This document shows positions 3,001 through 43,687 of a stretch of DNA of 64,000 bases, in pieces. Made by a program: the position numbers and the translations under genes. The stretch is taken from IMG/VR virus record IMGVR_UViG_3300034117_001582, positions 186,001-250,000 of that record; one strand, 5' to 3'. Under the pieces are notes generated by a model. It searched no databases. It was not told the origin of the DNA and saw only the letters and a program-made list of their open reading frames with translations. Within the stretch, counting starts at the first letter, position 1. Every line of letters begins with the position of its first letter.

Positions 3001-4067
3001 GATGTGCCATTTGTGCCTGATGTTCCATTCGCACCACTAGTTCCATTTGTTCCGCTAGTCCCGTTTAATCCTGATGTTCCATCCGTTCCGTTTGTACCAT
3101 TTGTTCCTGAAGTTCCATTTGTTCCTGAAGACCCATTTGTTCCACTTGTTCCATTAACCCCTGATATACCACTTGTTCCATTCGTACCATTTGTTCCCGA
3201 AGTTCCGTTTGCCCCTGACGTACCATTTGTTCCCGAAGTTCCGTTTGCCCCTGACGTACCATTTGTTCCCGAAGTTCCGTTTGTACCATTAGTTCCTGAG
3301 GTACCATTTGTTCCGCTAGTTCCATTAGTACCACTAGTGCCATTTGTACCGTTTGTGCCTGAAGTTCCGTTTGCTCCGTTTGTACCTGAAGTTCCGTTTG
3401 CTCCGCTGGTACCATCCGTCCCACTTGTTCCGTTCGTGCCGTTTGCTCCGCTTGTGCCGTTGGTTCCATTAGTCCCTGAAGTTCCATTAGTACCACTAGT
3501 GCCGTTTGTACCTGAAGACCCATCCGTTCCGTTTGTACCATTTGTTCCTGAAGTTCCATTAGTTCCGCTAGTTCCTGAAGTACCGTTGGTACCTGATATA
3601 CCACTTGTTCCATTTGTACCATTTGTTCCGCTAGTACCATTAGTCCCTGATGTTCCATTTGTACCTGATGTGCCTGCAGCTCCGCTTGTTCCATTTGTCC
3701 CACTTGTACCATTAGTGCCTGATGTACCATTTGTCCCATTAGTCCCATTCGTACCTGAGGTCCCATTTGCGCCGTTAGTTCCTGATGTACCACTTGTTCC
3801 TGATGCACCAGCAGTAAATCCAGTTACCGAAACGGAATTTCCATCATTTCTTACTAAATTTAATGTTTGAGCAGATGTAACAAAAGTTCCACCTGTAACA
3901 AAAATATCTGTTGCTCCACTTAATATAAAAGACTTTAAATTATTAACATATGTATGTACCGTATCACCCGTTGCCGCAGAGAAATAAGAAACCAACGGAA
4001 CTAAGTCTGTGGCCCCTATGCCCGAGAGCGGTAAAAATGGTAATTGAGATATTTTTTTATTTGCCAT
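1..4067 (-). CDS. Giant Gly-X-Y (GTS/GTN/GAN) repeat fibre protein, putative tail/head fibre; runs off the window start
   Basis: My translation from ATG 4067: MANKKISQLPFLPLSGIG..., then ~1,010 aa of G-T-S/G-T-N triplets, a ~170-aa globular domain (nt ~260-770), then more triplets. The frame is the same at 4067, across the globular domain and at the window start, with no stop seen, which explains its absence from the ORF track. TATTTAT lies upstream (plus 4083-4089). Confidence 0.9.
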   Translation of the reverse strand, partial: MANKKISQLPFLPLSGIGATDLVPLVSYFSAATGDTVHTYVNNLKSFILSGATDIFVTGGTFVTSAQTLNLVRNDGNSVSVTGFTAGASGTSGTSGTNGANGTSGTNGTNGTNGTSGTNGTSGTNGTSGAAGTSGTNGTSGTNGTSGTNGTNGTSGISGTNGTSGTSGTNGTSGTNGTNGTDGSSGTNGTSGTNGTSGTNGTNGTSGANGTNGTSGTDGTSGANGTSGTNGANGTSGTNGTNGTSGTNGTSGTNGTSGTNGTNGTSGTNGTSGANGTSGTNGTSGANGTSGTNGTNGTSGISGVNGTSGTNGSSGTNGTSGTNGTNGTDGTSGLNGTSGTNGTSGANGTSGTNGTSGTNGTSGTNGTSGTNGTSGTNGTNGTNGTNGTSGTNGSNGTSGTDGTSGANGTSGTNGTSGANGTSGTNGTSGTNGTNGTNGTNGTSGTNGANGTSGTNGTSGVNGTNGTNGTSGTNGTDGTSGTNGTSGANGTSGTNGTNGTSGTNGTNGTNGTSGTDGSSGTNGTSGTNGTNGTSGANGTSGTNGTSGTNGTDGTSGTNGTNGTSGTNGTNGTSGTNGTSGTNGTNGTSGTNGTSGTNGTNGTSGTDGTSGANGTSGTNGTNGTNGSSGTNGTSGANGTSGTNGTDGTSGANGTSGTNGTSGTNGTSGTNGTSGTNGTSGLNGTSGTNGTDGTDGTSGTNGTSGANGTNGTDGTSGTNGTSGANGTNGTNGTSGTNGTNGTSGTNGTNGTSGTNGTSGTNGTNGTSGTNGTSGISGVNGTSGTNGTSGTNGTSGTNGTNGTSGTNGTSGTNGTNGTSGTNGTNGTSGTNGTSGTNGTNGTSGTNGTSGTNGTNGTSGTNGTNGTSGTSGTNGTSGTNGTSGTSGTNGTNGTSGTNGTSGTNGTNGTSGTNGTSGTNGTNGTNGTNGTSGTNGTSGTNGTSGTNGTNGTSGTNGTSGTNGTNGTSGTNGTNGTSGTNGTSGTNGTNGTNGTNGTSGTNGANGTSGTNGTSGTSGTNGTSGTNGTNGTSGTNGTDGTSGTNGTNGTNGTSGTNGTSGTNGTSGTNGTNGTSGTNGTNGTSGTNGTSGTNGTNGTSGTNGTSGVNGFSTGLVYYFNPSSASTIPTYYVMDRNIVIGAGTTLTATGAGTQLIGSFSTIIGDPGITTIPAGNWNFENYVSMSSNGGTPKLYADIYIRTTGGTETLIGSNSAAPHPISDGTLVELYLFSVPVPATTVNISDRIVVKFYATSLGAKTMTCYFEDATIAQVTTSLSPFIAGTSGTDGTSGTNGTSGTSGTNGSSGTNGTSGTNGTNGTNGTSGTNGTSGTNGTNGTSGTNGTNGTSGTNGTSGTNGTNGTSGTNG
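774..3809 (-). repeat. 9-bp-period coding repeat (GGN ACN TCN/AAY/AGY) encoding Gly-X-Y triplets
   Basis: Degenerate gttccattt/gtacctgaa units throughout; third codon positions vary. A second block lies at 1-258. Confidence 0.95.
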
Positions 4068-4107
4068 TAAATGGGTTTTTTAATAAATATTGAGTGAGGG
4101 TGAAAGT

Positions 4108-4473
4108 TTACCAATTAAATTCACAACAAAAGTCACTATTTACAAATGAGTCCAAAACGGTCACATATATTTTATCTCGTAGAGGTAATATTATTGTTCC
4201 TTGATCGGTGGTTATATTAAATTCGGCCATATATCTATTTGTTTTTGATGTGTTTTTTTTTGTGAATTGATAGGTAATTGTGTGGGAATCATTTGAATAA
4301 TTACAAACACCATTTGTTATTTTATATATACCACTATCAACATCCACCATTGAAAGGGTTATTGTTGCTCCCGTTAAGTTTGTGTTTTGATAATTATAAT
4401 CCAATCTACCATCCTTAAATAGATTTATTTCAAGGACAGGCAAGGTTGCGTTTTTTCTTATAAAAAATTCCAT
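4108..4473 (-). CDS. BppU/DUF2479-like Ig-fold baseplate or fibre-adaptor protein
   Basis: MEFFIRKNATLPVLEINL...LTGATITLSM...ITYQF...YMAEFNIT...IILP pattern resembles BppU N-terminal domains; lies next to the fibre. Start moved to 4473 because TATTTAT sits 4 nt upstream. Confidence 0.55.
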   Translation of the reverse strand: MEFFIRKNATLPVLEINLFKDGRLDYNYQNTNLTGATITLSMVDVDSGIYKITNGVCNYSNDSHTITYQFTKKNTSKTNRYMAEFNITTDQGTIILPLRDKIYVTVLDSFVNSDFCCEFNW

Positions 4474-4489
4474 AAACATAAATAGTTAG

Positions 4490-4520
4490 AAAAAAGAAAA
4501 GGTGTCCTTTCGAACACCTT
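4490..4520 (-). terminator. Rho-independent terminator
   Basis: 7-bp stem (plus AAGGTGT 4499-4505 / ACACCTT 4514-4520) followed on the minus strand by TTTTCTTTTT. Confidence 0.7.
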
Positions 4521-4591
4521 CCTTAGATTCTAAACACCCCCCTTTCTTTAAAAGGTTTATGAATTAAGAGATTTACCTCTACCTTCCTATT

Positions 4592-6517
4592 TTAAGCCGT
4601 TGGTTTTAACCCTATACCGCTAACGACATCTTGGACTTGTTTAAATTTCTCATCCATTTTAGTGGTAATATCTTTAATTGCCGGTTCGATTAACTTAGCA
4701 ACCTCTTGTTTAAATTTATTTTCATCCACACTTGCAAACATTAATCCTGAAATACCTTCTGTACCAAAACTTGTTTTGTAACCCTCCATCGCCTTTGTCG
4801 CAATCATTGCACTTAACTCATCAACTCTATTTTCTTTAATTGCTCTTTCAATAACATCTTCAGGAAGTTCTTCAAATGCTGTGAGAATCATATTATGCTC
4901 ATCTTCTTTATTTTTAACTTGGTCAGCAATTTTTTGACCCAATCTTGTTTTAATGTCCTTTAACACATTATTACCTTCAGCACCATACAATCCATTCATC
5001 ACATCCAAGAACGTTTCGTTAACGATTGTTTTATTGTAACCGGCACGTAATAACATTATTCTTTCCTCACGCAAAGTTGATTCAACAATTCTTTTTCTAT
5101 TTTTATTAATACCAACCAAAGAAAAATTATATCTTTTGTTAATTAATTTTTTTTCTTCTGAAATAATTTGTTTTTTTTCAATATGTTCAGAAACGACCTT
5201 TCTGATTGTATTAGATACTGACATAATCCTGTTTTCCTTATAAATATCTTTATTTTGTTCTAATGTGAATCTTAAACCAAATATTTTTAATTTAGAACCA
5301 ACATGTACCAATCTTTTTACCATTTGGTTTGCCCTTCTTGGGTATTTGTCTTTATATGTTAAAAAACACGACTCAACGTCTTGTCTTCTTTCAGTGATTG
5401 TCTCCTCACCACCTAAGGTATCAATAGTTTTTGAACCATCATTAACAAGTACCATATCATTATAAAAATCTCTTGTAAGTCTAATACACTGCCTTTCGGT
5501 AATGTCTTTTTGAGGTTTTGGAGGTTTTATTACAATTTTTTTAAGTTTAACTTCTATTTCGTTATTACTATTAAATTTTAAATTATATCTTTTTTTAACG
5601 GAAATATACCCTTGGTTGGTTACTTTAACAACTATTTTATCAATATCTTTAACTTCGTGTGTAACTCCACCTTTACCTGATATCAACGGGGTTGTTTCAT
5701 CGTCTCCGTAAACCTGTATATCAGAACCCATCAAAGGATTATCATTTTCATCAATAACGGAAACTTTAAAGGGTGTGGTTGTTTTGATTTTAAAATTTAC
5801 AACATTTTCATAACCCTTACGTATAATTAATTTTTTTTCAGAATTAGGGTTGTCCTCATCTCCCTTACTCATCATAGAGTTATTTAACTTGATGGTTTTT
5901 TCTATATTCTCTTTAATGTTAAAATACTTAACACCAACAGTAATGTTTAACAGTTCACCACTAGCCTCCGCATCGAATACGGGGTATTTTGTTTTATCTA
6001 AAATTATGTTAGATAACATACCATTATTATCGGTTACGTTATTTCCAAATTCAATATCAGTACGTTTATACTTTATGGTTATTGTCGCATTTGGTATAGG
6101 GGAATTAAACTCATCATTAACCTGAACAGATAATGATGTTATATCAAATGTTGTTTTTACTATTACCTCCTCAACGTTTTGTACGTCCCTAAACGTAAAG
6201 TCTTGATTATAAACTTTAGGTTGGGATAAATCAATATTCTCCACAAGATCTTCATACCCCTCATTTTTATTTGTTACTTTATATGTGTATACCCCTAATG
6301 GGATATTTTCAATTTTAAAGAAACCATTTTCGTCAGATGTCGCACCTTTAATTAATTTTTCGTTTTGAAATAATTTTACTTGTGAATTTGGAGATTTACT
6401 TGCTTTATATTTTACATAACCTTGAAGTGTAGCAAATCCATCTTCCTCGTTTAATAAACGATGAAGGGATGAAATTTGTTTTTTTTCAGTTTCAGTAAGG
6501 ATTAATTTTCTTAACAT
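4592..6517 (-). CDS. Leader-bearing 641-aa protein with carboxypeptidase-regulatory-like (transthyretin-fold) repeats and a helical C-terminal module
   Basis: LQGYVK...PNSQVKL...GATSDENGFFKIENIPLGVYT; VQVNDEFNSPIPNATITI...TDNNG; leader LTETEKKQISSLHRLLNEE; internal second leader at nt 5224. Confidence 0.65.
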   Translation of the reverse strand: MLRKLILTETEKKQISSLHRLLNEEDGFATLQGYVKYKASKSPNSQVKLFQNEKLIKGATSDENGFFKIENIPLGVYTYKVTNKNEGYEDLVENIDLSQPKVYNQDFTFRDVQNVEEVIVKTTFDITSLSVQVNDEFNSPIPNATITIKYKRTDIEFGNNVTDNNGMLSNIILDKTKYPVFDAEASGELLNITVGVKYFNIKENIEKTIKLNNSMMSKGDEDNPNSEKKLIIRKGYENVVNFKIKTTTPFKVSVIDENDNPLMGSDIQVYGDDETTPLISGKGGVTHEVKDIDKIVVKVTNQGYISVKKRYNLKFNSNNEIEVKLKKIVIKPPKPQKDITERQCIRLTRDFYNDMVLVNDGSKTIDTLGGEETITERRQDVESCFLTYKDKYPRRANQMVKRLVHVGSKLKIFGLRFTLEQNKDIYKENRIMSVSNTIRKVVSEHIEKKQIISEEKKLINKRYNFSLVGINKNRKRIVESTLREERIMLLRAGYNKTIVNETFLDVMNGLYGAEGNNVLKDIKTRLGQKIADQVKNKEDEHNMILTAFEELPEDVIERAIKENRVDELSAMIATKAMEGYKTSFGTEGISGLMFASVDENKFKQEVAKLIEPAIKDITTKMDEKFKQVQDVVSGIGLKPTA

Positions 6518-13627: not shown

Positions 13628-15228
13628 GCTACTATTTCAAAATTGTTAAGTTGGTTAAAAGCGTTACCTCTGGTTTCACTAGTTCCTGTACCTCCAGCGT
13701 TTAAGTCAACAAAGTAATTTATCGCATCATCTTCATTTGTAAATTCAGGAAGTTGGTCAGCGGATTTACATTTTGTAAAAAATGAGACTGCCACTTCAGC
13801 AGCAATATCAACATCATTTACAACTTCAGGGTTACTTACCAATTCCCTACCAATACAAGTACCATACTTTTCGTAATTCCCTTTAAACGTTAACCCATTA
13901 AACCCTCTTCCTCTATATTTAAAACCTTCGGTTTTTGAATTTCCAAACATACCTCCGTAAACTCGATTAAAAAATTTTTCATCGTCTGATTTTAATTCAT
14001 TTAATTCAACATCGTCAGATGGTACTCTACTTTTAAAAATTTCCCGAATTCTAGAGTTATCTGTATTACCATACCCAGTTTCATTTTGAGGGATAAACCC
14101 CGACTCTTTACCTATGACGCAAAGAATACCGACTTGGGTGTATGGGTTAGTAATCCCTTTTTTATTCATATAATCTATCATTATTTGAGCGTTTCGTCTT
14201 GTTTCACCACCTAAACCAACAATTTCAACTTTACCGTTTAAAAGTGAAACAACATTAGAAATTACACCCATTTTTATTAAGAACATAGATAAGTCTTCAT
14301 CATCAAAACCTTTAATTTTTAAATTAAAAAACATTTCCTCTAATGTTTCAGAATCCGCAATCCCCGTTTCTGGTAAATTAACGGATTTTTGATAATTATA
14401 AATCGCTTCTTGAGTGTCTCTGTCAAACTTACCGGTAATCTCTAAATCATCTGATATTGATAAGAAGTTCAGTGCTAATTGTATTTGTTCAATATCGGGT
14501 TTAAAACTACCACTACTTCTTGAGTCGTAAACGTTACCTGATTTCCACATTTCTTGAAATCTCTCTAAAAATTCATATATAGTATCAAAATCGGTAACAT
14601 CTTCACCACTAATATCAACATTATCTTTTTCTATGAACGGTAAGTCTTCTATTTTTGGTTCTATATCAATTTCAAAATCAGAAACATTTTGAAATAACGC
14701 ACTATCAATTTCATTTTTTAAGTTATTAATTTTATCATTACTAAACCCTAAACCATAATCTATAGAATCATATGACCCTAAAACATCTGCACCATTTTTA
14801 GTAAATGTCTGATAAAATAATTTTGATTCATCTTCTAACTCTTTAAAATCTTCCTTTTCTTCACCACCATAAAAATAATCCTCATCAACAATACCTTTAA
14901 TGATGTTAATATTTGCCCTTGGAAATGTTTTATTTAATGCGTCAATTAAAAATGGTATGTTTTTTTTATTTTTAAATTTATCATTAACCCCAATAGACAC
15001 AAAAACATGGTCTACGTAAGGCATTGGGGATTGGTCTGTTAGTTGATTTAACAATTTATCTATTGTCATATCATCGTTTACTAAGTTTGGTAAACTGATA
15101 AAATCATCACTTTCTAAATAACCTATAAGGCGGTCACCTATTAATACAACCTTAACTGGCGACTCGATATCCTCCTTAAGGTTTGACAATCTTTTAAAGT
15201 TTTTTATTTCATGTAAAATAGTTTTCAT
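13624..15228 (-). CDS. GH19-family lytic glycosidase with a peptidoglycan-binding domain and a degenerate SGNH-like N-terminal domain
   Basis: PG-binding IQLALNFL...TGKFDRDTQEAIYNYQ...TGIAD; GH19 KESG...YRGRGFNGLTFKGNY...NPEVV...AAEVAVSFF; N-terminal IGDR...SIGVND. Confidence 0.8.
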   Translation of the reverse strand: MKTILHEIKNFKRLSNLKEDIESPVKVVLIGDRLIGYLESDDFISLPNLVNDDMTIDKLLNQLTDQSPMPYVDHVFVSIGVNDKFKNKKNIPFLIDALNKTFPRANINIIKGIVDEDYFYGGEEKEDFKELEDESKLFYQTFTKNGADVLGSYDSIDYGLGFSNDKINNLKNEIDSALFQNVSDFEIDIEPKIEDLPFIEKDNVDISGEDVTDFDTIYEFLERFQEMWKSGNVYDSRSSGSFKPDIEQIQLALNFLSISDDLEITGKFDRDTQEAIYNYQKSVNLPETGIADSETLEEMFFNLKIKGFDDEDLSMFLIKMGVISNVVSLLNGKVEIVGLGGETRRNAQIMIDYMNKKGITNPYTQVGILCVIGKESGFIPQNETGYGNTDNSRIREIFKSRVPSDDVELNELKSDDEKFFNRVYGGMFGNSKTEGFKYRGRGFNGLTFKGNYEKYGTCIGRELVSNPEVVNDVDIAAEVAVSFFTKCKSADQLPEFTNEDDAINYFVDLNAGGTGTSETRGNAFNQLNNFEIVA

Positions 15229-15533
15229 TTGTATTCTGCTTTTGGTATTTTTTTAGGATAAACAACATAATATTCATTTAAAAATGAAATTAAATTATCC
15301 TCATCGTTTATATAATCAACATCAACATCTTCTTCCCATTCATCCTCATCATCCATTAATGATTCAAAAATGTCAAAGTTTTTTGAGTTATCAAATCCAA
15401 ACTCCTCAAAAAAACTATATTCAATAAAGTCTTCTCTTACCATATCATCACCATCACCAATCATCTTAAACTCGACGATTATTAAGTTTTGTACCTTGTC
15501 AATATATTGTGATATGACTTCAACTACTTCCAT
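15225..15533 (-). CDS. Acidic hypothetical protein
   Basis: ORF with coupled overlaps to both neighbours. Confidence 0.65.
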   Translation of the reverse strand: MEVVEVISQYIDKVQNLIIVEFKMIGDGDDMVREDFIEYSFFEEFGFDNSKNFDIFESLMDDEDEWEEDVDVDYINDEDNLISFLNEYYVVYPKKIPKAEYK

Positions 15534-16024
15534 TAGTTATATTTGTTAAATCTCCTAAACATATCAAGTGATTTATTCACACTCTCTTCTATTTGGTCTT
15601 CTTCACCGTCCAATTTTTGTTCATCGTCTAATAAATCGTCAAATTCAATATCATCGTATAATTCTTCATCTTCATCCTCATAAACGTCAGAAGGGCCTTT
15701 TGATACAAAATCATAAGGTCTTTTACCAAAACCCATTTGTGTCATGGATTGTTGTGGACCATCAGATTCAAACTCATATGCCTGGTCAATTGAATCGTAA
15801 TTTCCTGGTTTTGCGGTAATCTCATTAACATTATGATTTCTATATGTCTTAACATTACCTAAATTATCTACGGTAACGCCTTCTTTATCTCCTGCCGCAT
15901 CATAAACCGTAAGTGGTGTCATATTTGATGACACATTACCAGTTGCATAACCATCATAAACGGTTGAATGTTGTTTTAAAATTGATTGTCTGTCCTCATC
16001 AGACATTGTTGAATATCCTCTCAT
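15533..16024 (-). CDS. Leader-bearing acidic hypothetical protein
   Basis: MSDEDRQSILKQH leader type; C-terminal IEESVNKSLDMFRRF. Confidence 0.7.
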   Translation of the reverse strand: MRGYSTMSDEDRQSILKQHSTVYDGYATGNVSSNMTPLTVYDAAGDKEGVTVDNLGNVKTYRNHNVNEITAKPGNYDSIDQAYEFESDGPQQSMTQMGFGKRPYDFVSKGPSDVYEDEDEELYDDIEFDDLLDDEQKLDGEEDQIEESVNKSLDMFRRFNKYN

Positions 16025-16707
16025 TCTATTTTTTTATTTATTGTTTTATGTGCTTCTTGCATCCAAAACTTCTTTGCGGTGTTTGATAACCTCTGCATTG
16101 AATTTTGTATATTAGATACACTTGTTTCTTTATTTTCATTTTCTAATAGTTTTAATGATGCTCTGATAAAGATGTCTCTTGTCTGTTGCGATCTTTCTAT
16201 TAGTTTATTTATAATTACTTTATCGCCTTTATTAAATTCAATATTATGTGATATTAATTTAATATAGTCTTTAATGTAGTCGGGACCGGCCAAAATAAAC
16301 TTACCACCTTCAGTGTACATGTTATGTGTACCTAACCTTTTTTCTAACTCTAAAAACTCGTAGATTTTATTTATTTCTCCCTTATCAAAAAGAGATAAGA
16401 ATTCACCAATTTTTACTAAATCATCAACATCCTTAATTTTGACTTCTTGTAATGATTCTACATCGTAATCAGTATCAATAATCCATGCATCCTCTTCGGG
16501 GATTAAAGATAACCTACTAAAAATATTGTTGTTTTCATCATACCACTCAACTCGGTATTGAACACCAATATCCCTACCTGTAAATTTTGGCACATTTTCT
16601 ATACTTATAACCTTTCCTTTTATTCCAGCACCTAAAGATTCACCATCCATATGAACCAAAACAATTCTATCGTCTTTTTTTAGTTCAGGATTTAATTTAT
16701 TTCTCAT
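16021..16707 (-). CDS. Hypothetical protein with an SH3/DUF4314-like N-terminal domain
   Basis: DRIVLVHMDGE...GIKGKVISI...YRVEW; TATTTAT at plus 16712-16718. Confidence 0.55.
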   Translation of the reverse strand: MRNKLNPELKKDDRIVLVHMDGESLGAGIKGKVISIENVPKFTGRDIGVQYRVEWYDENNNIFSRLSLIPEEDAWIIDTDYDVESLQEVKIKDVDDLVKIGEFLSLFDKGEINKIYEFLELEKRLGTHNMYTEGGKFILAGPDYIKDYIKLISHNIEFNKGDKVIINKLIERSQQTRDIFIRASLKLLENENKETSVSNIQNSMQRLSNTAKKFWMQEAHKTINKKIE

Positions 16708-16754
16708 ATTAATAAATATAATTATATTAATAATAACGCCAATAGATTATTAAT

Positions 16755-19214
16755 CTATTTTATAATCGTTAAGTTCCCTGAAAATTCTCTTTTACCATCA
16801 TCTTTAATCATACCAAATCTAACAACCCAAGTATATGTTCCATCAGGACATTTAATGTTATTATATGTTCCATCCCAAGTTGATTTAGAATCATTTGTTT
16901 CCCATATAGTTTCACCCCATCTGTTAAATATTTTCATATTAAAGTCATAAGGATTAAATCCTGATGTGAATACGGGAGCAAATGTCTGATTATGTTCATC
17001 ACCATCAGGGGTAAACGTATTAGGTATATATATCAAATCTTGTGGACAAAGTTCCAAAGTCACATTAAATGTTTGAGGGAGTGACACACAACCATTATCC
17101 CATCTTACAACATCAAAAGTAAATAAACCATCCTGATCCCAAGTTATATTAATAGTGGGGCCTTGTAATGTATCACCAAATACGTACCACTCATTATAAC
17201 CACCATTAGGTGATATCGCTTCATACATATCAACTATACTATCACCTTCACATATTTGGTGATATTCATAATTAACTCCATTTCTACCGTCAACAACAGG
17301 CGTTATTAATGGTCTTGGATATACTTGGACATTTATATTTGTGTCAAAAACACATCCTGATTGATTATAAACATAGGTAATATTATCAATACCGACAAAA
17401 CCATTATCAGGACAATATTCATTACCCCAAATATTATTACCAAATAAGATACCTCCAGGTGGTGTTGTAATAACATTAACACAACCATCATATTCACAAT
17501 AAGGTCCCATAGGTGTGATAACTGGTAGTACGTTTAAAACCACAATATTAAAGTTCTGAGGTAATGATTGGCAACCAAGTTGGTTTACACCAATCACTGA
17601 TAGCGCACCATTATAAAATCCACCATTAACCCCCGTTACATCCAAGTTTATTTGACCCGTACCTTGTCCTGAGGTGATATTTCCTATCGTGTTAGTCCAA
17701 ACATACCCTAAGTTAGGGAAAAGACTTGTAATCCCATAAGGATTGATTGTGGAGTTATAACAAACCGTGTCTAAACCTGTAATTTGGTTGATTGTAACCA
17801 TTGGTGGGTCAATTAATGTTGTTGTTCCTTGTGATGTACACCCATAAGTGTCAGTAACAATACAACTAATATTTCCCGAACATAAATTATTTGCGACTTG
17901 CGTTGTTTGTCCATTACTCCATAAGAACGTATATGGTGAAACCCCATCAATTGGATTAACTGCCGATTGACCATCACAATCCCCAAAACATGTTGGATTA
18001 ATATTTGCAAATTGTGGTGATTGTAATGGTGGCGGGTTATTTAATGTTACTGAAGAACTATAGGTACATCCAGCAGCATCAACTAAATTATATGTGTATA
18101 TACCTGAACATAAATTAGTTAAATTAAAATTATTACCTAAACCATTCCATGATATAGTCGTAACTCCATTCCCCCCATTTGGTGTGATGATTATATCTCC
18201 GTCACACCCATTATTACAATGTGGGTCATTTGCCACAACATTTGGTGGTGGTAAATTAGGTGGTCCAGGAGCCACAAATACGGTGTCAGGACCCAAATTT
18301 CCAATACCCACATTACACGTACTCCATCCCGCATTACAAATAGGATATACAAAATGACAAGTATAATTTGCTCCTGCCGGTGGAGGGGTTACAGTAATTG
18401 TCGGACCCGTACCAATTGGATTTGGGTTACCAACCTGATACCAAGTTAGGGTAGGGGTAACAGCAGGACCACTTGGTGTCCATCTATGTGAGTTGTTTTG
18501 AGTTGACCATTGAGAAGAGTTTCTTCCCGGAACTGCAATACCAATAGTTCCTGGTTGGTTATGAATCCCTTGAACTGCCGTCCCAAGAGCCCAATTAGGG
18601 CAATTTGGTTTGTTCTGTATGTGGTTTTCAATTACATTTGTTGATTCATATATGACAATATGAAAATTACCTTGTAAATTAGTACACAAGTACATAGGAA
18701 CGTTAATCCAGCTAACGGTTAATTTTCGACAAGGAGCAACTCCCGATACTTGATATCTGATTTGTCCTCCGATTCCAGGGTGCCAGTCTTGCCAAGGACC
18801 CATAATACAATTCTTTGGAACATTTAAACCACCATTAGGAATTGCAACAGAAGCAAAGGTTGCTGGTTGGCCACCTGAAAAACCAATCCATCCATTAGAT
18901 CCAATGTAGAACTGTGTGTATGTATTTCCAAAAAAACAAAAGGTAAACCCTATGTTTTGTGGTTGAGATATTGCATCATCACCTAAAAAGACTTGCGTTC
19001 CTGTGTTGGTTTGTGCAACATAAGGAATGTTAGTTACACCATAGTTTGTGGTTTGATTAGGATTTGCACCACCTGGACCACACTGACTTAAGTCCGCCGT
19101 TAAAGTGGTCGAGTTAACACCACAAGGTAATAATTGGTCAGGACCAAGATATGGGCAATATTGTGAATAACTATAAAAAGTTAAAAAAATAAAAAGGTAT
19201 TTAAGTAGTTTCAT
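16755..19214 (-). CDS. SprB-like adhesin with gliding-motility-associated C-terminal domain (T9SS type-B sorting signal)
   Basis: Signal peptide ending YSYSQ; SprB-like repeats (C.G.CDG...GG.SPYTFLWSNG.TTQ...NLC.G); C-terminal IYIPNTFTPDGDEHNQTF...IFNRWGETIWET...WDGTYN...DGTY. Confidence 0.9.
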   Translation of the reverse strand: MKLLKYLFIFLTFYSYSQYCPYLGPDQLLPCGVNSTTLTADLSQCGPGGANPNQTTNYGVTNIPYVAQTNTGTQVFLGDDAISQPQNIGFTFCFFGNTYTQFYIGSNGWIGFSGGQPATFASVAIPNGGLNVPKNCIMGPWQDWHPGIGGQIRYQVSGVAPCRKLTVSWINVPMYLCTNLQGNFHIVIYESTNVIENHIQNKPNCPNWALGTAVQGIHNQPGTIGIAVPGRNSSQWSTQNNSHRWTPSGPAVTPTLTWYQVGNPNPIGTGPTITVTPPPAGANYTCHFVYPICNAGWSTCNVGIGNLGPDTVFVAPGPPNLPPPNVVANDPHCNNGCDGDIIITPNGGNGVTTISWNGLGNNFNLTNLCSGIYTYNLVDAAGCTYSSSVTLNNPPPLQSPQFANINPTCFGDCDGQSAVNPIDGVSPYTFLWSNGQTTQVANNLCSGNISCIVTDTYGCTSQGTTTLIDPPMVTINQITGLDTVCYNSTINPYGITSLFPNLGYVWTNTIGNITSGQGTGQINLDVTGVNGGFYNGALSVIGVNQLGCQSLPQNFNIVVLNVLPVITPMGPYCEYDGCVNVITTPPGGILFGNNIWGNEYCPDNGFVGIDNITYVYNQSGCVFDTNINVQVYPRPLITPVVDGRNGVNYEYHQICEGDSIVDMYEAISPNGGYNEWYVFGDTLQGPTINITWDQDGLFTFDVVRWDNGCVSLPQTFNVTLELCPQDLIYIPNTFTPDGDEHNQTFAPVFTSGFNPYDFNMKIFNRWGETIWETNDSKSTWDGTYNNIKCPDGTYTWVVRFGMIKDDGKREFSGNLTIIK

Positions 19215-19315
19215 GTTTTAATTATAAATACCAAAACTATACATTATAAACTTTGATAAATCAATATGACTTATCATTTATGTACATCTTTTGAATATTA
19301 ACGATATTTATTTGT

Positions 19316-20428
19316 ATGTCTAAAAAACTTTTAACATTACTTGCGGAAGAAATTAAAGAACAGGGGTTCGGTAGATATTTTCAAGACGCCATACTACCAA
19401 GCGGTCAAAGAATAGGAGACGTTAAAAGTGTTGACTTAGCGACTAGTAAACCAATCGATATCACTATTTCAGACACAGAAGATTTACCAAGCGACACAGA
19501 AGAATTACCAAATGAAGTTAAAGACGAGGAAGATGTGATTTTTCAAGATATTGTAAAAGACTCTGAAAAATCAATTGGTACTAAATATTGTTATGGTGGT
19601 AATGATCCAAATGAAGGTATAGATTGTAGCGCGTTTATGTTATATTATTACAAAAAGTACGGAATAGACCTACCAAGAAGCGCTAATAGTCAATATAATG
19701 CGTCTAAAAAATTTGACAATAAGGATAACTTAAAAGTTGGTGATTTAATCTTTTTTGAAGGAACACAAAAAGCATTACCTGATGGTTCCGCAAGTCATGT
19801 GGGTATGGTTCATAAAATACACCCTGACGGAAAAATAGATATGATTCATGCGAGCAGTAGTAAAGGAGTTATAATTCAACCGAATGTTTTTGGAAAAAAC
19901 TATTACAAAAAACATTTTTTAAGTTTTGGAACGTTTAGAAAAGGTATATCCCCCAAAAAAGTTGAAGACAATAAGATATTAGGTGGAAATACAAATTTAA
20001 AAAAACAAAAATTTATTTACCCATTACCAAAAAAAGTTAGATTGTCATCTCCATTTGGGCCTAGAGGGGGAAGACATCATAATGGTGTTGACCTTGCTTG
20101 TCCTGGTAATACAGAAGTATATTCGGTTGCTGATGGGAAAGTGGTTAGGGCAGACATTAAAGACTATGAAGGTTACGGTAATTTTATAATTGTTAAACAC
20201 ATCTTAAATGGTGAAACCTTATATTCAGGATATGCCCATTTAACTAAAATGTTGGTAAGTGTTGGTGATGAAGTTAAACAAGGACAATTAATTGCGAAAT
20301 CTGGTGGATCACAGGGTATGCGTAACGGTGCAGGTAATTCAGAGGACCCACATTTACATTTTGAAATTAGAAAAAGTCAAACGGGTGGACCCATTAATCC
20401 AATACATTTTATAGACGACATTAAGTAA
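19316..20428 (+). CDS. NlpC/P60 + M23 dual-domain peptidoglycan endopeptidase
   Basis: GIDCSAF...LPRSA...GDLIFF...HVGM...MIHAS; HNGVDL...YAHL...STG-like SEDPHLHFEI; TATTTAT at 19305-19311. Confidence 0.92.
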   Translation: MSKKLLTLLAEEIKEQGFGRYFQDAILPSGQRIGDVKSVDLATSKPIDITISDTEDLPSDTEELPNEVKDEEDVIFQDIVKDSEKSIGTKYCYGGNDPNEGIDCSAFMLYYYKKYGIDLPRSANSQYNASKKFDNKDNLKVGDLIFFEGTQKALPDGSASHVGMVHKIHPDGKIDMIHASSSKGVIIQPNVFGKNYYKKHFLSFGTFRKGISPKKVEDNKILGGNTNLKKQKFIYPLPKKVRLSSPFGPRGGRHHNGVDLACPGNTEVYSVADGKVVRADIKDYEGYGNFIIVKHILNGETLYSGYAHLTKMLVSVGDEVKQGQLIAKSGGSQGMRNGAGNSEDPHLHFEIRKSQTGGPINPIHFIDDIK

Positions 20429-20541
20429 GTTATAAGTTAATCGTAGACACTAAAAATAGACATACACATTGGCGGTATATTAAAAAAGGTTAATATTTGG
20501 GTGTGTATCGGCTATTATAAATATTATTTTACTTTATTTTT

Positions 20542-20572
20542 TTTGTATTTTACAGAAAGTTATGTATCTTTG
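20542..20572 (+). promoter_or_regulatory. Bacteroidetes housekeeping-type promoter (-33 TTTG, -7 TATCTTTG)
   Basis: TTTG 20542-45, 19-nt spacer, TATCTTTG 20565-72. Confidence 0.75.
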
Positions 20573-20587
20573 TTTTAAATAAACAAA

Positions 20588-20941
20588 ATGAAAGATATGG
20601 ACAAAATTCAAAAAGAAGCGGCACTTTATAAAGACTTACCAACTAAAAAATTAAAAAAAGCGATTCGTAGTTATAAATCTTTAGCATTTTCTAATTCAGA
20701 TATTTTTAATTTTCTGTACACCTTAGTTATTATGGTTGGGACTGCGGTGTTGATTTCAGGGTTTAATTTAGTCCTTCTGTTAGTAGTTGGTTTAGTTCAC
20801 TACTTATTTTTTTGGGTGTACTTACACAAATACAAAAAATCTAAAATTGTAAGTGATAAGGACAAAGAAGAAATTGATGAGATTATTAAAATTTTAGAAT
20901 CTCACCTTAAAGAACAAGAAACAAAAAACCCCTCCGTATAG
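20588..20941 (+). CDS. Small membrane protein with two TM helices
   Basis: Hydrophobic FLYTLVIMVGTAVLISGFNLVLLLVVGLVHYLFFWVY; upstream host-type promoter. Confidence 0.75.
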   Translation: MKDMDKIQKEAALYKDLPTKKLKKAIRSYKSLAFSNSDIFNFLYTLVIMVGTAVLISGFNLVLLLVVGLVHYLFFWVYLHKYKKSKIVSDKDKEEIDEIIKILESHLKEQETKNPSV

Positions 20942-23235: not shown

Positions 23236-24510
23236 ATGTTAGTAGAAAAACTTAAAAATATTCCAAAAAGTAGTGGTTGTTACCTTTTTAAAGACAAAAA
23301 AGGTCAAATTATCTATGTTGGTAAGGCAAAACACCTCCCAAATAGGGTAAAATCGTACTTTTCTAACAAAAATCACACAAGTAAAACCAAATTATTGGTA
23401 GAAAACGTGTCAGATGTGGATTTTTTGACCACTTTAGACGAAAATTCGGCACTTGTGCTTGAAAATGACCTAATTAAGACCCATAATCCCAAATTTAACA
23501 TTAAATTAAAGGACGACAGGTCAAAAAAATGGTATCTAACCCTTACAAATGGTGATTTTCCACGTTTAGAAGTTAAAAATGACACAAGTTTAGACTCAGA
23601 CCCCCTAATTGAAGTACCAAGTAGTAGTTTATGTCATGAAATGTATGATTTATTACATGATATCTTTAATTTACGTTCATGTTCTTATGAATTAACACCC
23701 GAAAACATTGAAAATAACAAGTTTAAAGTGTGTTTAGAGTCCCATATGGGTCGATGTGACGCCCCATGTGTATCAAACATCAATAAATTTATCTATCGTG
23801 AGGTAATAACTGAACTAAAACAGGTAGTTTCATTCAACTTTGACCAACTACGAAGTAAATTAATTCGTAAAATGAACGCTTTTAGTAAAAATATGGAGTT
23901 TGAGAAGGCAAATACCATCAAATTTCGACTAAATGCACTTGATAAGTATGAAAAATGTGTAGAATCCGCAAGAATTGGTGGTTATTTGGTGATTGCCGAC
24001 GAGTTCAAGACTACTTTTGGGTTACAAAACGCCCCAATTGACATAGAAATGTATGATAACTCCCATACTGCGGGTGATTGTCAGGTATCTGCCCTTGTTA
24101 GATATACAAATGGTAGGAAGAACACGTCAGAATACCGTAAGTTTAACATTAAAACGGTTGAGGGTCCTGATGATTACGCATCATTTGATGAGGTTTTACG
24201 TAGAAGGTTTACCAGATTACTTAAAGAACGTGGAAAACTACCTGACATGGTAGTAATCGATGGTGGTAAGGGTCAATTAGGGGTGGCAAAGAGGGTTTTT
24301 GAGGAACTTTCACTACTTGATAAGGTAGATTTACTATCTATTGGTAAAAACTCGTCTCACAAGTCAGATACTGTCCACTTTTGTGGCGGAAATAGTGTTA
24401 AATTTGAAAATTCTAAGTTTTTTAACCTACTTGGTACTATACAAGATGAGGTTCACAGGTTTGTTATTACTTTTCACCGTAAAAAACGAACAAAAACTAT
24501 GTTTAATTAA
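23236..24510 (+). CDS. uvrC: UvrC-like excinuclease (GIY-YIG + UVR + RNase H-like domains; no C-terminal HhH)
   Basis: GCYLF...IIYVGKAK.L.NRVKSYF; IEMYDNSH; YRKFNIK...DDYA...RRF; PDMVVIDGGKGQL; QDEVHRF, then ends. Confidence 0.93.
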   Translation: MLVEKLKNIPKSSGCYLFKDKKGQIIYVGKAKHLPNRVKSYFSNKNHTSKTKLLVENVSDVDFLTTLDENSALVLENDLIKTHNPKFNIKLKDDRSKKWYLTLTNGDFPRLEVKNDTSLDSDPLIEVPSSSLCHEMYDLLHDIFNLRSCSYELTPENIENNKFKVCLESHMGRCDAPCVSNINKFIYREVITELKQVVSFNFDQLRSKLIRKMNAFSKNMEFEKANTIKFRLNALDKYEKCVESARIGGYLVIADEFKTTFGLQNAPIDIEMYDNSHTAGDCQVSALVRYTNGRKNTSEYRKFNIKTVEGPDDYASFDEVLRRRFTRLLKERGKLPDMVVIDGGKGQLGVAKRVFEELSLLDKVDLLSIGKNSSHKSDTVHFCGGNSVKFENSKFFNLLGTIQDEVHRFVITFHRKKRTKTMFN

Positions 24511-29709: not shown

Positions 29710-30366
29710 ATGAAAACTTTAGTTCTTGTTCTTTTTGTTTTATCTTATCTTTCTTTGAATTCTCAGGTTAATACCGATTCTATTGAATCAATTATGATAC
29801 AATTAATCAGAAAAGATAGGGGGTTAAAAGGGACTACTTATTTATACACATCAGAAAGATGTAAAAAAGTGTCTAAGATTCATTTGGATTATACCATGAA
29901 GTATCTTAACGCAGATATGTACTCGCACAATGAAACAATACCTTTTTACAGTAAAAAGGTTTTACGTTCTCCGTCAGATAGATACTCACTTTTTGATAAA
30001 GATTCCGTAACTATAAAAGTTATGGATGACCTTTATAAAAAAGTAACTCTTTGGTGTTATGACGCAGAAATCATGACAGGTTGCTATGTTACGGATATTA
30101 ATGAACCTAACATCAATAAAATAATTGCTGAAAAATTGTTTATGAAATTTAAAAACTCACCAACACATTATAAGTCAATGGTTCAAAACCCAACTGACGG
30201 TCAAATTTATAGAGGTAATTTCTCAATTAGTTATAAAAAAGAAATGATTAATGGTGTAGAATATTATAGTTTTGACTGCGTTGGTGTTTTTGACGAATCA
30301 AGATACTACCCATCAGAAACAAATCGTTATAAAAAAAGTAAAGAAAGTAATTTTTATTTTGACTAA
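29710..30366 (+). CDS. Secreted CAP (SCP/Tpx-1/Ag5)-like protein
   Basis: Signal peptide ..SLNSQ; YSHNE...AEI...FKNSPTHYKSM. Confidence 0.6.
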   Translation: MKTLVLVLFVLSYLSLNSQVNTDSIESIMIQLIRKDRGLKGTTYLYTSERCKKVSKIHLDYTMKYLNADMYSHNETIPFYSKKVLRSPSDRYSLFDKDSVTIKVMDDLYKKVTLWCYDAEIMTGCYVTDINEPNINKIIAEKLFMKFKNSPTHYKSMVQNPTDGQIYRGNFSISYKKEMINGVEYYSFDCVGVFDESRYYPSETNRYKKSKESNFYFD

Positions 30367-32237: not shown

Positions 32238-32771
32238 ATGAAAAATTTATCTCTTATTCTTTTTGTTTTTATTTCACAAGTATTATTCTCACAAGTTACT
32301 TACGATGCTAACGATCCGTTTTCAAAAATCACAAAACAAAGTGTGGAATTAGTTACTGGTGCCGATTATGTTACCATGAGTAAAACATTAATGAACGAAA
32401 TAAACACATACCGTTTACAAAATGGTTTACCTAAATTGGCTTATGATGAAAAAATGTTTACATACTCTAAATTGTACGCCGACAGTATGACATCAACAAA
32501 CACTTATAATCACAGTGATTTGAATGGTGGTGAATACAAATTGGAAAATATTAACCTATTGAAAACTGTTGGTACATTTTTATTTTTAGATGAAAAAATG
32601 GTTAAAAGTATTCCAACTACAATCTTAAATTCATGGGAATCTTCTCCAGGTCACAACGCAAACCTTTTGAGTAAAGATGTTACAAAAGTTGGTATTGCAA
32701 TATCATCAGTTGTATATATGAAAAACGGGTTTTACGTTTACGACATAAAAGCGGTAATGGTTGCTAAATAA
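32238..32771 (+). CDS. Secreted CAP-domain protein
   Basis: Signal peptide ..VLFSQ; NEINTYRLQNGLPKL...YNHSD...ENI...WESSPGHNANLL...VGIA. Confidence 0.88.
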   Translation: MKNLSLILFVFISQVLFSQVTYDANDPFSKITKQSVELVTGADYVTMSKTLMNEINTYRLQNGLPKLAYDEKMFTYSKLYADSMTSTNTYNHSDLNGGEYKLENINLLKTVGTFLFLDEKMVKSIPTTILNSWESSPGHNANLLSKDVTKVGIAISSVVYMKNGFYVYDIKAVMVAK

Positions 32772-43249: not shown

Positions 43250-43687
43250 TTAATGAGTCGTTCTCTTTATCTTTTTATTCTTTTTCACATTAAAGTTATA
43301 TCTTTTATCGTGAGAAGGACCCTTTTCATACCAAAACTCAATACAGTCAATATCAAGACCAGTTTTTTCATTAACATAAGAAAGAACGGTTTTAGAAAAT
43401 AGTTTTTTTCTTGTTGCAACTTTTGGTATAAAATTATCTATTTCTTCTCCGGTCTCAGAATTAACATACATATCTTGTTTACACCCCTCACCTTTACCAC
43501 CAACAGTATAAACTGTAAATATCGCATCACCGTATCCAATCGACTCATTTTCAAACGGATTACTATCATTTGGATATATTCTTATCCTATCGGATTCTCT
43601 TTCATATGAAAGTTTTGGCCCATACAATACGTCCAACAAATTAAATACAATTTTCTGATACTGTGATTTTGTTATGATTACGTCCAT
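43250..43687 (-). CDS. Cassette protein, tandem paralog of 43736
   Basis: IITKSQYQKIVFNLLD...KGEGCK.DM...RKKLFS.T.LSYVNEKT.LDIDCI. Confidence 0.8.
   Translation of the reverse strand: MDVIITKSQYQKIVFNLLDVLYGPKLSYERESDRIRIYPNDSNPFENESIGYGDAIFTVYTVGGKGEGCKQDMYVNSETGEEIDNFIPKVATRKKLFSKTVLSYVNEKTGLDIDCIEFWYEKGPSHDKRYNFNVKKNKKIKRTTH

What the first reader, a model, noticed from the sequence alone, without database searches (positions are those of the whole stretch)
16755..19214. Phage-type genome encodes an intact T9SS type-B cargo (SprB-like adhesin) under the TATTTAT signal
Seen: signal peptide ending in Gln, SprB-like Cys repeats, a complete gliding-motility C-terminal domain, and TATTTAT 9 nt upstream. 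It sits between virion-type genes and a lysin. Established: type-B CTD proteins are exported by the Bacteroidetes T9SS with PorP/SprF-like partners and displayed on the surface. Inference: the phage decorates or occupies the host T9SS, altering adhesion or gliding, or masking receptors against superinfection.
Basis: partly seen in the sequence, partly recalled or inferred. Interest (0 to 1): 0.65.

Follow-up and report, generated by a model that had tools for sequence, protein, structure and literature searches.

The report
Jumbo phage carries T9SS adhesin gene
A 292-kb T4-like lake phage and more than a hundred related phage contigs carry an intact gene for a protein built to leave the cell through the Bacteroidota host's type IX secretion system and sit on its surface, so the phage probably re-dresses the infected cell; what it gains from this is not yet known.

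Summary
ORF 16755-19214 (-) encodes 819 aa. It has a Sec signal peptide cut before an invariant Gln, a 300-aa conserved beta-sandwich head, two SprB-type Cys repeats, PKD/Ig-like spacers and a full type-B T9SS C-terminal domain. TATTTAT lies 9 nt upstream.

The genome is a real phage: 291,867 bp, with a T4 gp23-type capsid protein, terminase, sheath and baseplate genes. The gene is not a chimera. Contigs from three other lake metagenomes bridge both gene ends without a mismatch.

Homologs occur in 143 IMG/VR contigs and in a 634-kb phage. They form their own clade apart from 76 Bacteroidota chromosomal homologs, and dN/dS is about 0.12-0.29. Half of the viral copies carry TATTTAT, against 1 of 79 bacterial ones. 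The phage has no porP/sprF; the bacterial homologs are also unlinked ("orphan") substrates.

Most likely this is a host-derived accessory gene whose product is exported by the host's Sec and T9SS and held by a host PorP/SprF-like carrier. The benefit (adhesion, exclusion or other) is untested.

It is not an SprB ortholog. Phage-encoded type-A T9SS cargo was reported once (Cryophage), so this is a new variant of a known kind.

The parts
19224..19230 (-). TATTTAT upstream word, 9 nt before the ATG; part of RTATTTAT(A/T), the phage-wide upstream motif
   Evidence: Read directly. It is 21-fold enriched before ORFs. Genes with it have a median upstream gap of 56 nt against 6 nt for the others. It is present before 41 of 82 viral homologs and 1 of 79 bacterial ones.
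16755..19214 (-). Whole ORF, 819 aa plus stop: phage-borne type-B T9SS substrate
19164..19214 (-). Sec/SPI signal peptide, aa 1-17; cleavage would expose Gln18
   Evidence: Sequence pattern. Gln18 is invariant in 20/20 homologs and kept across viral copies.
18225..19163 (-). N-terminal head, aa 18-330: an all-beta domain of about 200 aa inserted in a split Ig-like domain, plus a Cys-rich extension. It is the most conserved part.
   Evidence: AF2 model pLDDT 87.5, pTM 0.81. No solved relative. The same fold appears in viral and Bacteroidota CHU_C proteins of the ESM Atlas. Mean pairwise identity is 76% among 20 homologs, against 57% for the CTD.
17805..18224 (-). Two SprB-type Cys repeats, aa 331-470. 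The second is missing in the ~742-aa variants.
   Evidence: Pfam SprB 22.1 bits, below cut-off. The alignment shows the 76-aa deletion in some homologs.
17568..17798 (-). PKD_6 domain, aa 473-549
   Evidence: Pfam PF19408, 30 bits against a cut-off of 25
17037..17558 (-). Two further beta-sandwich (Ig-like) spacer domains, aa 553-726
   Evidence: Full-length AF2 model, pLDDT 80-90 over aa 320-819, all strands. No Pfam hit.
16758..17030 (-). Type-B T9SS C-terminal domain, aa 729-819
   Evidence: PF13585 2e-15 and TIGR04131 1.3e-11, both over cut-off and nearly full length. Invariant blocks IPNxFTP..E.N, NRWG, WDG, G.Y and a final G.

Best explanation
This is a host-derived accessory ('moron'-type) gene, kept by a large clade of T4-like jumbo phages of freshwater Bacteroidota.

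Proposed course of events:
1. During infection the gene is transcribed from the phage's own RTATTTAT signal.
2. The precursor crosses the inner membrane by Sec. Signal peptidase I exposes Gln18, which the host would cyclise (the Q-rule).
3. The type-B C-terminal domain takes the protein through the host's T9SS translocon.
4. Because the phage has no porP/sprF, an unlinked host PorP/SprF-like carrier collects it and holds it on the outer membrane. This is how 'orphan' type-B substrates are handled in Flavobacterium johnsoniae.
5. The stalk of SprB, PKD and Ig-like domains holds out the conserved N-terminal beta-sandwich, which is the working end and binds a conserved ligand.

The net effect is that the infected cell shows a phage-chosen adhesin-like protein. 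My preferred reading of the benefit is changed adhesion of the infected cell to particles, surfaces or neighbouring cells, or upkeep of a host surface function while host gene expression is shut down.

Shown: the sequence features, the phage origin, the linkage, the conservation and the separate phage clade. Inferred: expression timing, export, the carrier, surface display, the ligand and the benefit.
For: Substrate features:
- CTD hits over curated cut-offs and nearly full length.
- Signal peptide with invariant Gln at +1 (Q-rule in PMC5837995, PMC10653852).
- All type-B substrates need a Sec signal plus a CTD, and are known or predicted adhesins (PMC12618676).

The genome is a phage: gp23 capsid protein 3.6e-64, TerL, sheath (Phage_sheath_1C, 27.1 bits against a 26.9 cut-off) and a T4 baseplate protein; the gp19 tube match is weak (20.2 bits, below cut-off).

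The gene is no chimera:
- The 5.9-kb stretch is held at 95% or more of its words in 13 lake runs.
- Mismatch-free contigs bridge both gene ends in runs X9, X12 and X13.

The gene is kept by selection:
- 143 IMG/VR contigs carry a relative; 79 loci (76 viral, 3 bacterial orthologs) hold an intact ORF of 700 aa or more; dN/dS against the viral copies is 0.12-0.29.
- The head is the most conserved part.

It forms its own lineage: 65 phage sequences plus 2 Crocinitomicaceae MAG sequences make a clade with 100% local support, apart from 76 bacterial ones. In the first tree, 28 of 29 bacterial sequences form a clade at 99.

It is a host gene by origin: an 816-aa ortholog, 57% identical, lies beside enolase and carA in a Crocinitomicaceae MAG.

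The orphan status is native to the family:
- Only 2 of 80 bacterial loci have a PorP-like ORF within 6 kb.
- Host-like MAGs hold 10-21 PorP/SprF paralogs.
- F. johnsoniae orphans share one unlinked carrier.

It behaves as an accessory gene:
- It sits at different places in related phages, for example between the tube and baseplate genes in about 30 contigs.
- A complete relative has only a split mini-version.

It is under phage regulation: TATTTAT precedes 41 of 82 viral copies and 1 of 79 bacterial ones.

The same genome also encodes a type-A T9SS cargo and about ten other Q-rule secreted proteins.
Against: Nothing here shows transcription, export or surface display.
- The only RNA-library signal is patchy contigs, 90-95% alike, from a relative. 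DNA carry-over is not excluded.
- No signal-peptide predictor was run.
- The five CTD motifs defined in PMC12618676 are in a figure that I could not read, so their presence is judged only from conserved blocks.
- The head domain has no known fold relative or ligand.
- The host is not identified.
- The gene often lies among tail genes and shares its upstream word with the sheath and fibre genes. This also fits a structural role.
- The benefit named is a preference, not a result.
Confidence: 0.5

Rival explanations
1. Superinfection exclusion. The exported protein covers the phage's receptor. Or it competes with host type-B adhesins for PorP/SprF carriers or the gliding track, so that the receptor disappears from the infected cell and its debris.
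For: Phage resistance in Flavobacterium maps to gliding and T9SS genes, so T9SS-dependent surface components serve as receptors (PMC9804748; bioRxiv 10.1101/2020.10.02.323337). The protein mimics a host surface protein and has the same head. Its CTD is 50% identical to that of the Crocinitomicaceae ortholog but only 24-36% identical to 13 other type-B CTDs of that MAG. Carrier crosstalk is reported for CTDs of high identity.
Against: The head is highly conserved between phages and bacteria of several orders (50-74% identity). A binder in an arms race would be expected to evolve faster. There is no match to known defence or exclusion families. No receptor is known. A complete relative does without the head.
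Confidence: 0.22
2. A released, soluble product. The CTD serves only for export, and the head acts outside the cell as a binding protein or as an enzyme on polymers or particles.
For: CTD-carrier pairs decide whether a substrate is released, static or moving (PMC12618676). The head has many invariant polar residues, including the WQDW, GRNS and ENH blocks. Cryophage's T9SS cargoes are enzymes.
Against: Type-B substrates studied so far are anchored through PorP-like proteins (PMC9143113). The long Ig-like stalk suits display. There is no enzyme family hit.
Confidence: 0.13
3. A virion part (fibre or decoration protein). On this reading the signal-peptide-like start and the CTD-like end are structural modules and no export takes place.
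For: The gene lies beside fibre-like genes here, and between the tail tube and baseplate genes in about 30 relatives. The same upstream word precedes the sheath, tube and collagen fibre genes. Another SprB-repeat protein of this phage has neither signal peptide nor CTD.
Against: The signal peptide with Gln at +1 and the CTD blocks are conserved in all copies. The chromosomal bacterial orthologs have the same ends. The gene's position is not fixed, and a complete relative lacks the full gene. Tailed-phage virions assemble in the cytoplasm.
Confidence: 0.06
4. Assembly chimera or host DNA binned as phage.
For: The gene is host-like. IMG/VR labels one relative 'provirus'.
Against: Both junctions are bridged without a mismatch in three other runs, and depth is even. 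143 viral contigs carry the gene, with flanks homologous to other genes of this phage. All five large carriers tested have a gp23-type capsid gene.
Confidence: 0.01

Closest known systems
Orphan type-B T9SS substrates of Flavobacterium johnsoniae (Fjoh_1123, Fjoh_1720, Fjoh_4934) with their unlinked carrier Fjoh_1677 (PMC12618676)
   Same: Sec signal plus type-B CTD. No adjacent porP/sprF gene. A putative adhesin build. Export is expected to depend on a carrier encoded elsewhere.
   Different: Here the substrate is encoded by a phage and the carrier would be the host's.
SprB-SprF gliding adhesin pair (PMC9143113, PMC12635249)
   Same: Type-B CTD, SprB-type Cys repeats, and surface anchoring through a PorP-like barrel.
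   Different: [quoted passage not shown] This protein has 819 aa, two weak SprB repeats, no sprF, and a different N-terminal head. It is not an SprB ortholog.
Chromosomal homologs in Bacteroidota MAGs, e.g. the 816-aa protein of a Lake Mendota Crocinitomicaceae MAG (L087)
   Same: Same architecture from end to end: 57% identity overall, 74% in the head, 50% in the CTD.
   Different: The bacterial copies lack TATTTAT and sit among housekeeping genes. All but two of them fall outside the phage clade.
'Cryophage' T9SS cargo (Bellas et al. 2020, PMC7468147)
   Same: A phage genome encodes proteins with T9SS sorting domains. The genes are flexible between variants. The proposed use is hijacking host secretion.
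   Different: Those are type-A CTDs, handled by the PorV carrier, on an endoglucanase, a GH39 and a PA14 protein in one phage. Here there is a type-B CTD on an adhesin-like protein, kept across 143 or more viral contigs and two unrelated size classes of phage. This genome has a type-A cargo as well.
Phage proteins that remodel or disable host surface structures (e.g. DMS3 Aqs1 against type IV pili, PMC13436744)
   Same: The idea that a phage changes a surface machine that is also a phage receptor.
   Different: There is no homology. Those act from inside the cell as inhibitors, whereas this one would be a passenger of the machine.

Membership tests
T9SS type-B substrate (TIGR04131 / PF13585) | C-terminal type-B sorting domain at the very end of the protein, over the curated cut-offs | tested here: met
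   PF13585 57.1 bits against 27; TIGR04131 44.5 bits against 35; aa 729-818 of 819
T9SS type-B substrate (TIGR04131 / PF13585) | N-terminal Sec signal peptide | tested here: met
   Judged by pattern and conservation only. Gln at +1 is invariant. No predictor was available.
T9SS type-B substrate (TIGR04131 / PF13585) | Five conserved CTD motifs A-E needed for secretion (PMC12618676) | tested here: inconclusive
   Five invariant blocks are present in 20 homologs, but the paper defines the motifs in a figure that is not held.
T9SS type-B substrate (TIGR04131 / PF13585) | A PorP/SprF-like carrier, usually encoded directly downstream | tested here: not met
   None in the 291,867-bp phage or in the viral loci. 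This is not disqualifying: 3 of 12 F. johnsoniae substrates are orphans, and 78 of 80 bacterial homologs are unlinked.
T9SS type-B substrate (TIGR04131 / PF13585) | T9SS-dependent export and surface anchoring | not testable with these tools
   Needs expression in wild-type and T9SS-null hosts.
SprB gliding adhesin | Very large protein made mostly of SprB repeats | tested here: not met
   819 aa with two repeats; Pfam SprB 22.1 bits, below the 28-bit cut-off
SprB gliding adhesin | Adjacent cognate sprF | tested here: not met
SprB gliding adhesin | Movement along the gliding track | not testable with these tools
   Needs live imaging.
Phage-encoded T9SS cargo (as in Cryophage, PMC7468147) | Encoded in a bona fide phage genome | tested here: met
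   gp23 capsid protein, TerL, sheath and baseplate genes; tube match weak; CheckV 99%. Linkage confirmed.
Phage-encoded T9SS cargo (as in Cryophage, PMC7468147) | T9SS sorting domain on a signal-peptide protein | tested here: met
   Type B here. There is a second gene with type A plus cohesin at G000 287640-289550.
Phage-encoded T9SS cargo (as in Cryophage, PMC7468147) | Flexible gene content between variants | tested here: met
   Variable position. 742-aa and 819-aa forms. A split mini-version in a complete relative.
Known anti-phage defence or exclusion proteins (PADLOC) | Match to a defence family model | tested here: not met
   No hit for this protein

The most novel reading that the evidence does not exclude
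Large phages of freshwater Bacteroidota routinely use the host's type IX secretion system as a delivery route for their own surface proteins. This covers a very abundant T4-like clade of about 290 kb and, separately, phages of more than 600 kb. The cargoes include type B (this gene) and type A (a cohesin protein in the same genome). They give the infected cell a virus-specified surface that changes what it sticks to and which phages can land on it. The type-B cargo would take over a host PorP/SprF carrier, and possibly the gliding track.
Probability: 0.3. Interest if true: 0.75.

Novelty: new variant of a known kind. Interest (0 to 1): 0.6.

Why it matters
T9SS substrates shape how Bacteroidota glide, stick and feed, and T9SS-dependent surface parts are phage receptors in Flavobacterium. 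A phage-owned type-B substrate that has been kept under purifying selection across a very common group of lake phages would show three things:
- Viruses reprogram the outer surface of these cells, not only their metabolism.
- A type-B sorting domain can work with a carrier encoded on another replicon.
- The unknown but strongly conserved N-terminal domain, shared by many Bacteroidota surface proteins, has a function valuable enough for a virus to carry.

It also gives T9SS research a compact, natural 819-aa test substrate, and gives phage ecology a marker that links these phages to Flavobacteriales/Crocinitomicaceae-like hosts.

Tried and rejected
- PHROGs gave no family for the protein, and almost none for 20 other large proteins of the phage.
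- Pfam gave nothing for ten further window ORFs.
- Fold searches with the confident head model:
  - Foldseek against the PDB found nothing at E <= 1e-3.
  - The wide VIA search reached Z 7.6 at best, and only for the ~85-residue Ig-like part.
  - A profile search of PDB sequences found nothing.
  - BFVD found only uncharacterised phage proteins.
- A NIDO-like lead (Atlas feature score 0.80) was not confirmed by Pfam at E <= 1. I leave it as a lead.
- PADLOC gave no defence family.
- The sigma-70 promoter and terminator scan found no more than chance.
- Complex prediction was run with the phage CTD and three orphan PorP/SprF-like proteins of the Crocinitomicaceae MAG. The verdict was no answer: no support and no evidence against. 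It is not used.
- I first thought a PorP-like hit on 'C2' of that MAG lay next to the ortholog. The ortholog's contig is C6, so that idea was dropped.
- The full-length fold with a 20-row alignment modelled the head poorly, with pLDDT below 50 over much of aa 10-320. The head model from the 50-row alignment is the one used.
- No other genetic code was needed or tried.
Full report
WHAT IS THERE

The ORF at 16755-19214 on the minus strand encodes 819 aa, starting at the first possible start codon.
- Its last 90 residues match the type-B T9SS sorting domain nearly end to end and above both curated cut-offs: PF13585 57.1 bits against 27, and TIGR04131 44.5 bits against 35.
- A PKD_6 domain (aa 473-549) passes its cut-off.
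- The SprB repeat model reaches 22.1 bits, below its 28-bit cut-off, over two Cys-patterned repeats.
- The first 17 residues look like a Sec/SPI signal peptide. Cleavage would expose Gln18.
- In an alignment of 20 homologs Gln18 is invariant, as are all cysteines of the N-terminal part and five blocks of the C-terminal domain.
- Gln at +1 is the Bacteroidetes Q-rule (PMC5837995, PMC10653852).
- TATTTAT lies at 19230-19224, 9 nt before the ATG.

THE GENOME IS A PHAGE, AND THE GENE BELONGS TO IT

The window is bases 186001-250000 of a 291,867-bp IMG/VR record that CheckV rates 99% complete.
- The record has a T4 gp23-type major capsid gene (E 3.6e-64), a large terminase, a sheath gene just over its cut-off (27.1 against 26.9 bits) and a T4-type baseplate protein; the gp19-type tail tube match is weak, below its cut-off.
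- It has eight tRNA genes.
- GC content is 0.32, and 0.32-0.36 over the gene.

I laid Logan contigs of three lake-water metagenomes that are not flagged as the source on window 14800-20700.
- Mismatch-free contigs bridge the 3' end of the gene into the downstream phage genes: X13 record 9 (14800-17718) and X12 record 3 (16491-17939).
- Mismatch-free contigs also bridge the 5' end into the M23 peptidase gene: X9 record 32 (19032-20700), X13 record 16 and X12 record 6.
- Depth is even across the stretch.
- Thirteen runs hold 95% or more of the stretch's sampled words.

A FAMILY KEPT BY PHAGES

- The word-based protein search found 1412 relatives. The best 120 are 51-92% identical and 741-825 aa long, on contigs of up to 296 kb.
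- IMG/VR holds 143 contigs with a relative.
- The flanks of those loci carry homologs of other genes of this phage, but from scattered positions. In about 30 contigs the gene lies between the homologs of the tail tube and baseplate genes, next to the sheath gene. In others it lies in four or five other neighbourhoods.
- All five large carrier contigs tested have a gp23-type capsid gene, 43-82% identical to this phage's.
- One carrier is a complete 174-kb phage whose capsid protein is only about 40% identical, while its copy of this gene is about 65% identical.
- A complete 293,850-bp relative (capsid protein 75% identical) lacks the full gene. In its place it has two short ORFs, each with its own signal peptide followed by Gln. 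One carries the PKD-like part and the other an Ig-like domain plus a type-B CTD.
- A 634,780-bp uncultured phage (LR745206.1) has a 732-aa copy beside aminoacyl-tRNA-synthetase-like and EF-G-like genes.
- Seventy-nine loci (76 viral, 3 bacterial orthologs) have intact ORFs of 700 aa or more. dN/dS against this copy is 0.12-0.29 among the viral copies, with dS of 1-2.
- Among 20 homologs the head (aa 18-330) is 76% identical on average, the stalk 58-66% and the CTD 57%.

ORIGIN

A scan of one genome per prokaryote species found 121 loci, nearly all labelled Bacteroidota: Crocinitomicaceae, Flavobacteriales, Sphingobacteriaceae, Chitinophaga and others. None has other genes of this phage in its flanks.
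- A Lake Mendota Crocinitomicaceae MAG has an 816-aa ortholog with the same Pfam architecture, next to enolase and the small subunit of carbamoyl-phosphate synthase.
- A Flavobacteriales MAG has an 817-aa one beside a 2-oxoacid dehydrogenase gene.
- In a tree of the head domain, 28 of 29 close bacterial sequences form one clade (support 99) apart from the phage sequences.
- With 49 more distant bacterial sequences added, all 65 phage sequences plus two Crocinitomicaceae MAG sequences form a clade with 100% local support (FastTree), and the other 76 bacterial sequences lie outside it.

I read this as one old capture from a Bacteroidota host, spread within and between phage lineages, and perhaps two returns to Crocinitomicaceae. 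That family is the best host lead. The root and the direction of the two nested cases are not settled.

THE UPSTREAM WORD

- TATTTAT precedes 84 of 342 ORFs within 30 nt, where 4 are expected, and 99 ORFs within 40 nt, with a purine just before it.
- ORFs that carry it have a median upstream gap of 56 nt, against 6 nt for the rest. It therefore marks heads of transcription units.
- It also precedes the sheath, tube and collagen-fibre genes.
- It precedes 41 of 82 viral copies of this gene but 1 of 79 bacterial ones. The viral copies without it belong mostly to the more distant phages and share another conserved upstream sequence.

This shows that the gene is wired into phage regulation. Which temporal class it marks is inferred (late, by its company), not shown.

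THE HEAD

With a 50-row alignment AlphaFold2 gives a confident all-beta model: pLDDT 87.5, pTM 0.81.
- Foldseek finds no solved structure at E <= 1e-3.
- The wide structural search finds only Ig-like domains (Z up to 7.6), aligned to about 85 residues drawn from both ends of the model. The core of about 200 residues thus appears inserted in a split Ig-like domain.
- A PDB profile search is blank.
- The ESM Atlas holds the same fold in clusters labelled 100% viral with PKD_6, CHU_C and SprB, and in Bacteroidota CHU_C/PKD proteins, at TM 0.63-0.90.

The function of this domain is unknown. Its core is 48-64% identical in the more distant bacterial homologs, and the whole head 57-74% in the closer ones, across several orders, which argues for a conserved ligand or activity. 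The rest of the protein folds as a string of beta-sandwich domains with pLDDT 80-90.

HOW IT MOST LIKELY WORKS

The established rules are as follows.
- A T9SS substrate needs a Sec signal and a CTD.
- Type-B CTDs are collected by PorP/SprF-like carriers and stay bound to them on the surface.
- Most type-B substrates have a cognate carrier gene next to them, but three of the twelve in F. johnsoniae are orphans that share one unlinked carrier.
- Five CTD motifs are needed for secretion.
- Some type-B substrates ride the gliding track and others stay static.
(Sources: PMC12618676, PMC9143113.)

The findings here fit those rules.
- The phage has no PorP/SprF gene.
- The bacterial homologs lack a linked one as well: 2 of 80 loci have one within 6 kb, by an ad hoc HMM of limited sensitivity.
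- The three MAGs with orthologs have 21, 10 and 11 PorP/SprF paralogs.
- In the Crocinitomicaceae MAG at least four distinct paralogs lack an upstream type-B gene.
- The phage CTD is 50% identical to the CTD of that MAG's ortholog, and 24-36% identical to its 13 other type-B CTDs.

So the simplest path is Sec export, then the host T9SS, then the same host carrier that serves the host's own ortholog, and finally display on the surface. Every step after translation is inference.

WHAT THE PHAGE GAINS

This is open.
- I give most weight to changed adhesion of the infected cell, or upkeep of a host surface function. The reasons are that the conserved part is the shared head and that the gene is optional.
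- Superinfection exclusion by receptor cover or carrier competition is a serious rival, since Flavobacterium phage resistance maps to gliding and T9SS genes.
- A released product and a virion role come next.
- No defence-family match exists.

EXPRESSION

One lake metatranscriptome library holds contigs 90-95% alike over parts of the gene and of two downstream genes, and none over the peptidase gene. These come from a relative, and DNA carry-over is not excluded. I count this as a weak hint only.

COMPARISON AND NOVELTY

- The protein meets the sequence definition of a type-B T9SS substrate.
- It is not an SprB ortholog.
- In the paper library, one study reports phage-encoded T9SS cargo: three type-A proteins in 'Cryophage', called a unique occurrence (PMC7468147). 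No paper held there links T9SS to jumbo phages.
- New here are the type-B class with its different carrier logic, the adhesin-like build, and the scale: 143 or more viral contigs, and a capsid-gene clade with more than 600 IMG/VR contigs. Also new are the separate phage clade under purifying selection and the co-occurrence with a type-A cargo (signal peptide + cohesin + Por_Secre_tail), a secreted C-type lectin and about ten other Q-rule proteins in one genome.
- I class it as a new variant of a known kind, with interest 0.6.

LIMITS

- There is no signal-peptide predictor, no host and no experimental data.
- The trees are quick or FastTree searches.
- The viral loci include near-duplicates.
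- The complex prediction gave no verdict and is not used.

Noticed in passing
window 1-4067 (-); whole ORF G000 181308-190067: A 2919-aa ORF made largely of collagen triple-helix repeats (Pfam Collagen E 6.4e-155). Its GC content is 0.43-0.46 against 0.32 for the genome. It is probably a giant fibre, and TATTTAT lies 15 nt upstream.
   Followed up: partly
G000 287640-289550 (-), outside the window (L180 15640-17550): A second T9SS cargo in the same phage: 636 aa with a signal peptide cut before Gln, a cohesin domain and a type-A Por_Secre_tail CTD (48 bits against a cut-off of 27).
   Followed up: partly
G000 283618-284625, 276036-277904, 282746-283618, 280348-280830 and others; in the window 29710-30366 and 32238-32771: About ten further proteins have a signal peptide followed by Gln. 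One has a C-type lectin domain. The phage therefore seems to encode a whole set of exported proteins tuned to a Bacteroidota host.
   Followed up: partly
G000 64790-67099 (-): A 769-aa protein full of SprB repeats (Pfam 43 bits) with neither signal peptide nor CTD. It is possibly a virion protein that uses the same repeat type.
   Followed up: partly
whole genome; in the window e.g. 16711-16717, 19224-19230, 19305-19311: RTATTTAT(A/T) precedes 99 of 342 ORFs, in two spacing classes: 4-6 nt and 11-19 nt before the ATG. The close class would imply almost leaderless mRNAs. TATTTATA is the reverse complement of the T4 late-promoter word TATAAATA, but here the coding-strand orientation is TATTTAT (84 ORFs, against 22 for ATAAATA).
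   Followed up: partly
window 43250-48176 (-): A run of about ten small ORFs (119-201 aa), nearly every one with its own TATTTAT. Several share a short N-terminal similarity. No function is known.
   Followed up: partly
L270 1465-2594 (complete relative, 293,850 bp): In place of the 819-aa gene there are two adjacent short ORFs, each with a signal peptide followed by Gln. One (184 aa) is PKD-like. The other (191 aa) has an Ig-like domain plus a type-B CTD. This is either a minimal type-B cargo or a gene split in two.
   Followed up: partly
viral loci L013-L018, L028, L046, L064, L068 and others: In about 30 related phage contigs the gene lies between the tail tube (gp19-like) and baseplate (PF12322) genes. 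There it is preceded by a different conserved upstream sequence (GCTTTTAYTTTC...ATATATT) instead of TATTTAT.
   Followed up: partly
L189 (LR745206.1, 634,780 bp) 3962-6160: A phage of more than 600 kb carries a 732-aa copy of the family, 54% identical over the first 470 aa. It lies between a GluRS-like and an EF-G-like gene, and no flank genes are clearly shared with this phage.
   Followed up: partly
L279, L281, L285 (Crocinitomicaceae MAG): The PorP/SprF-like proteins without a linked type-B gene end in C-P-x-F or C-A-L-F. SprF uses C-terminal cysteines to bond to GldK on the gliding track (PMC12635249), so these orphans may be track-linked as well.
   Followed up: no
window 24854-60308: Ten large ORFs (313-615 aa) have no Pfam hit at E <= 1e-4, and PHROGs is nearly blank for the phage's large proteins. 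The clade is abundant in lakes (more than 600 IMG/VR contigs share its capsid gene) yet almost unannotated.
   Followed up: no
window 23236-24510 (+): A UvrC-like nuclease (GIY-YIG + UvrC RNase H domain) is encoded on the opposite strand to most genes.
   Followed up: no
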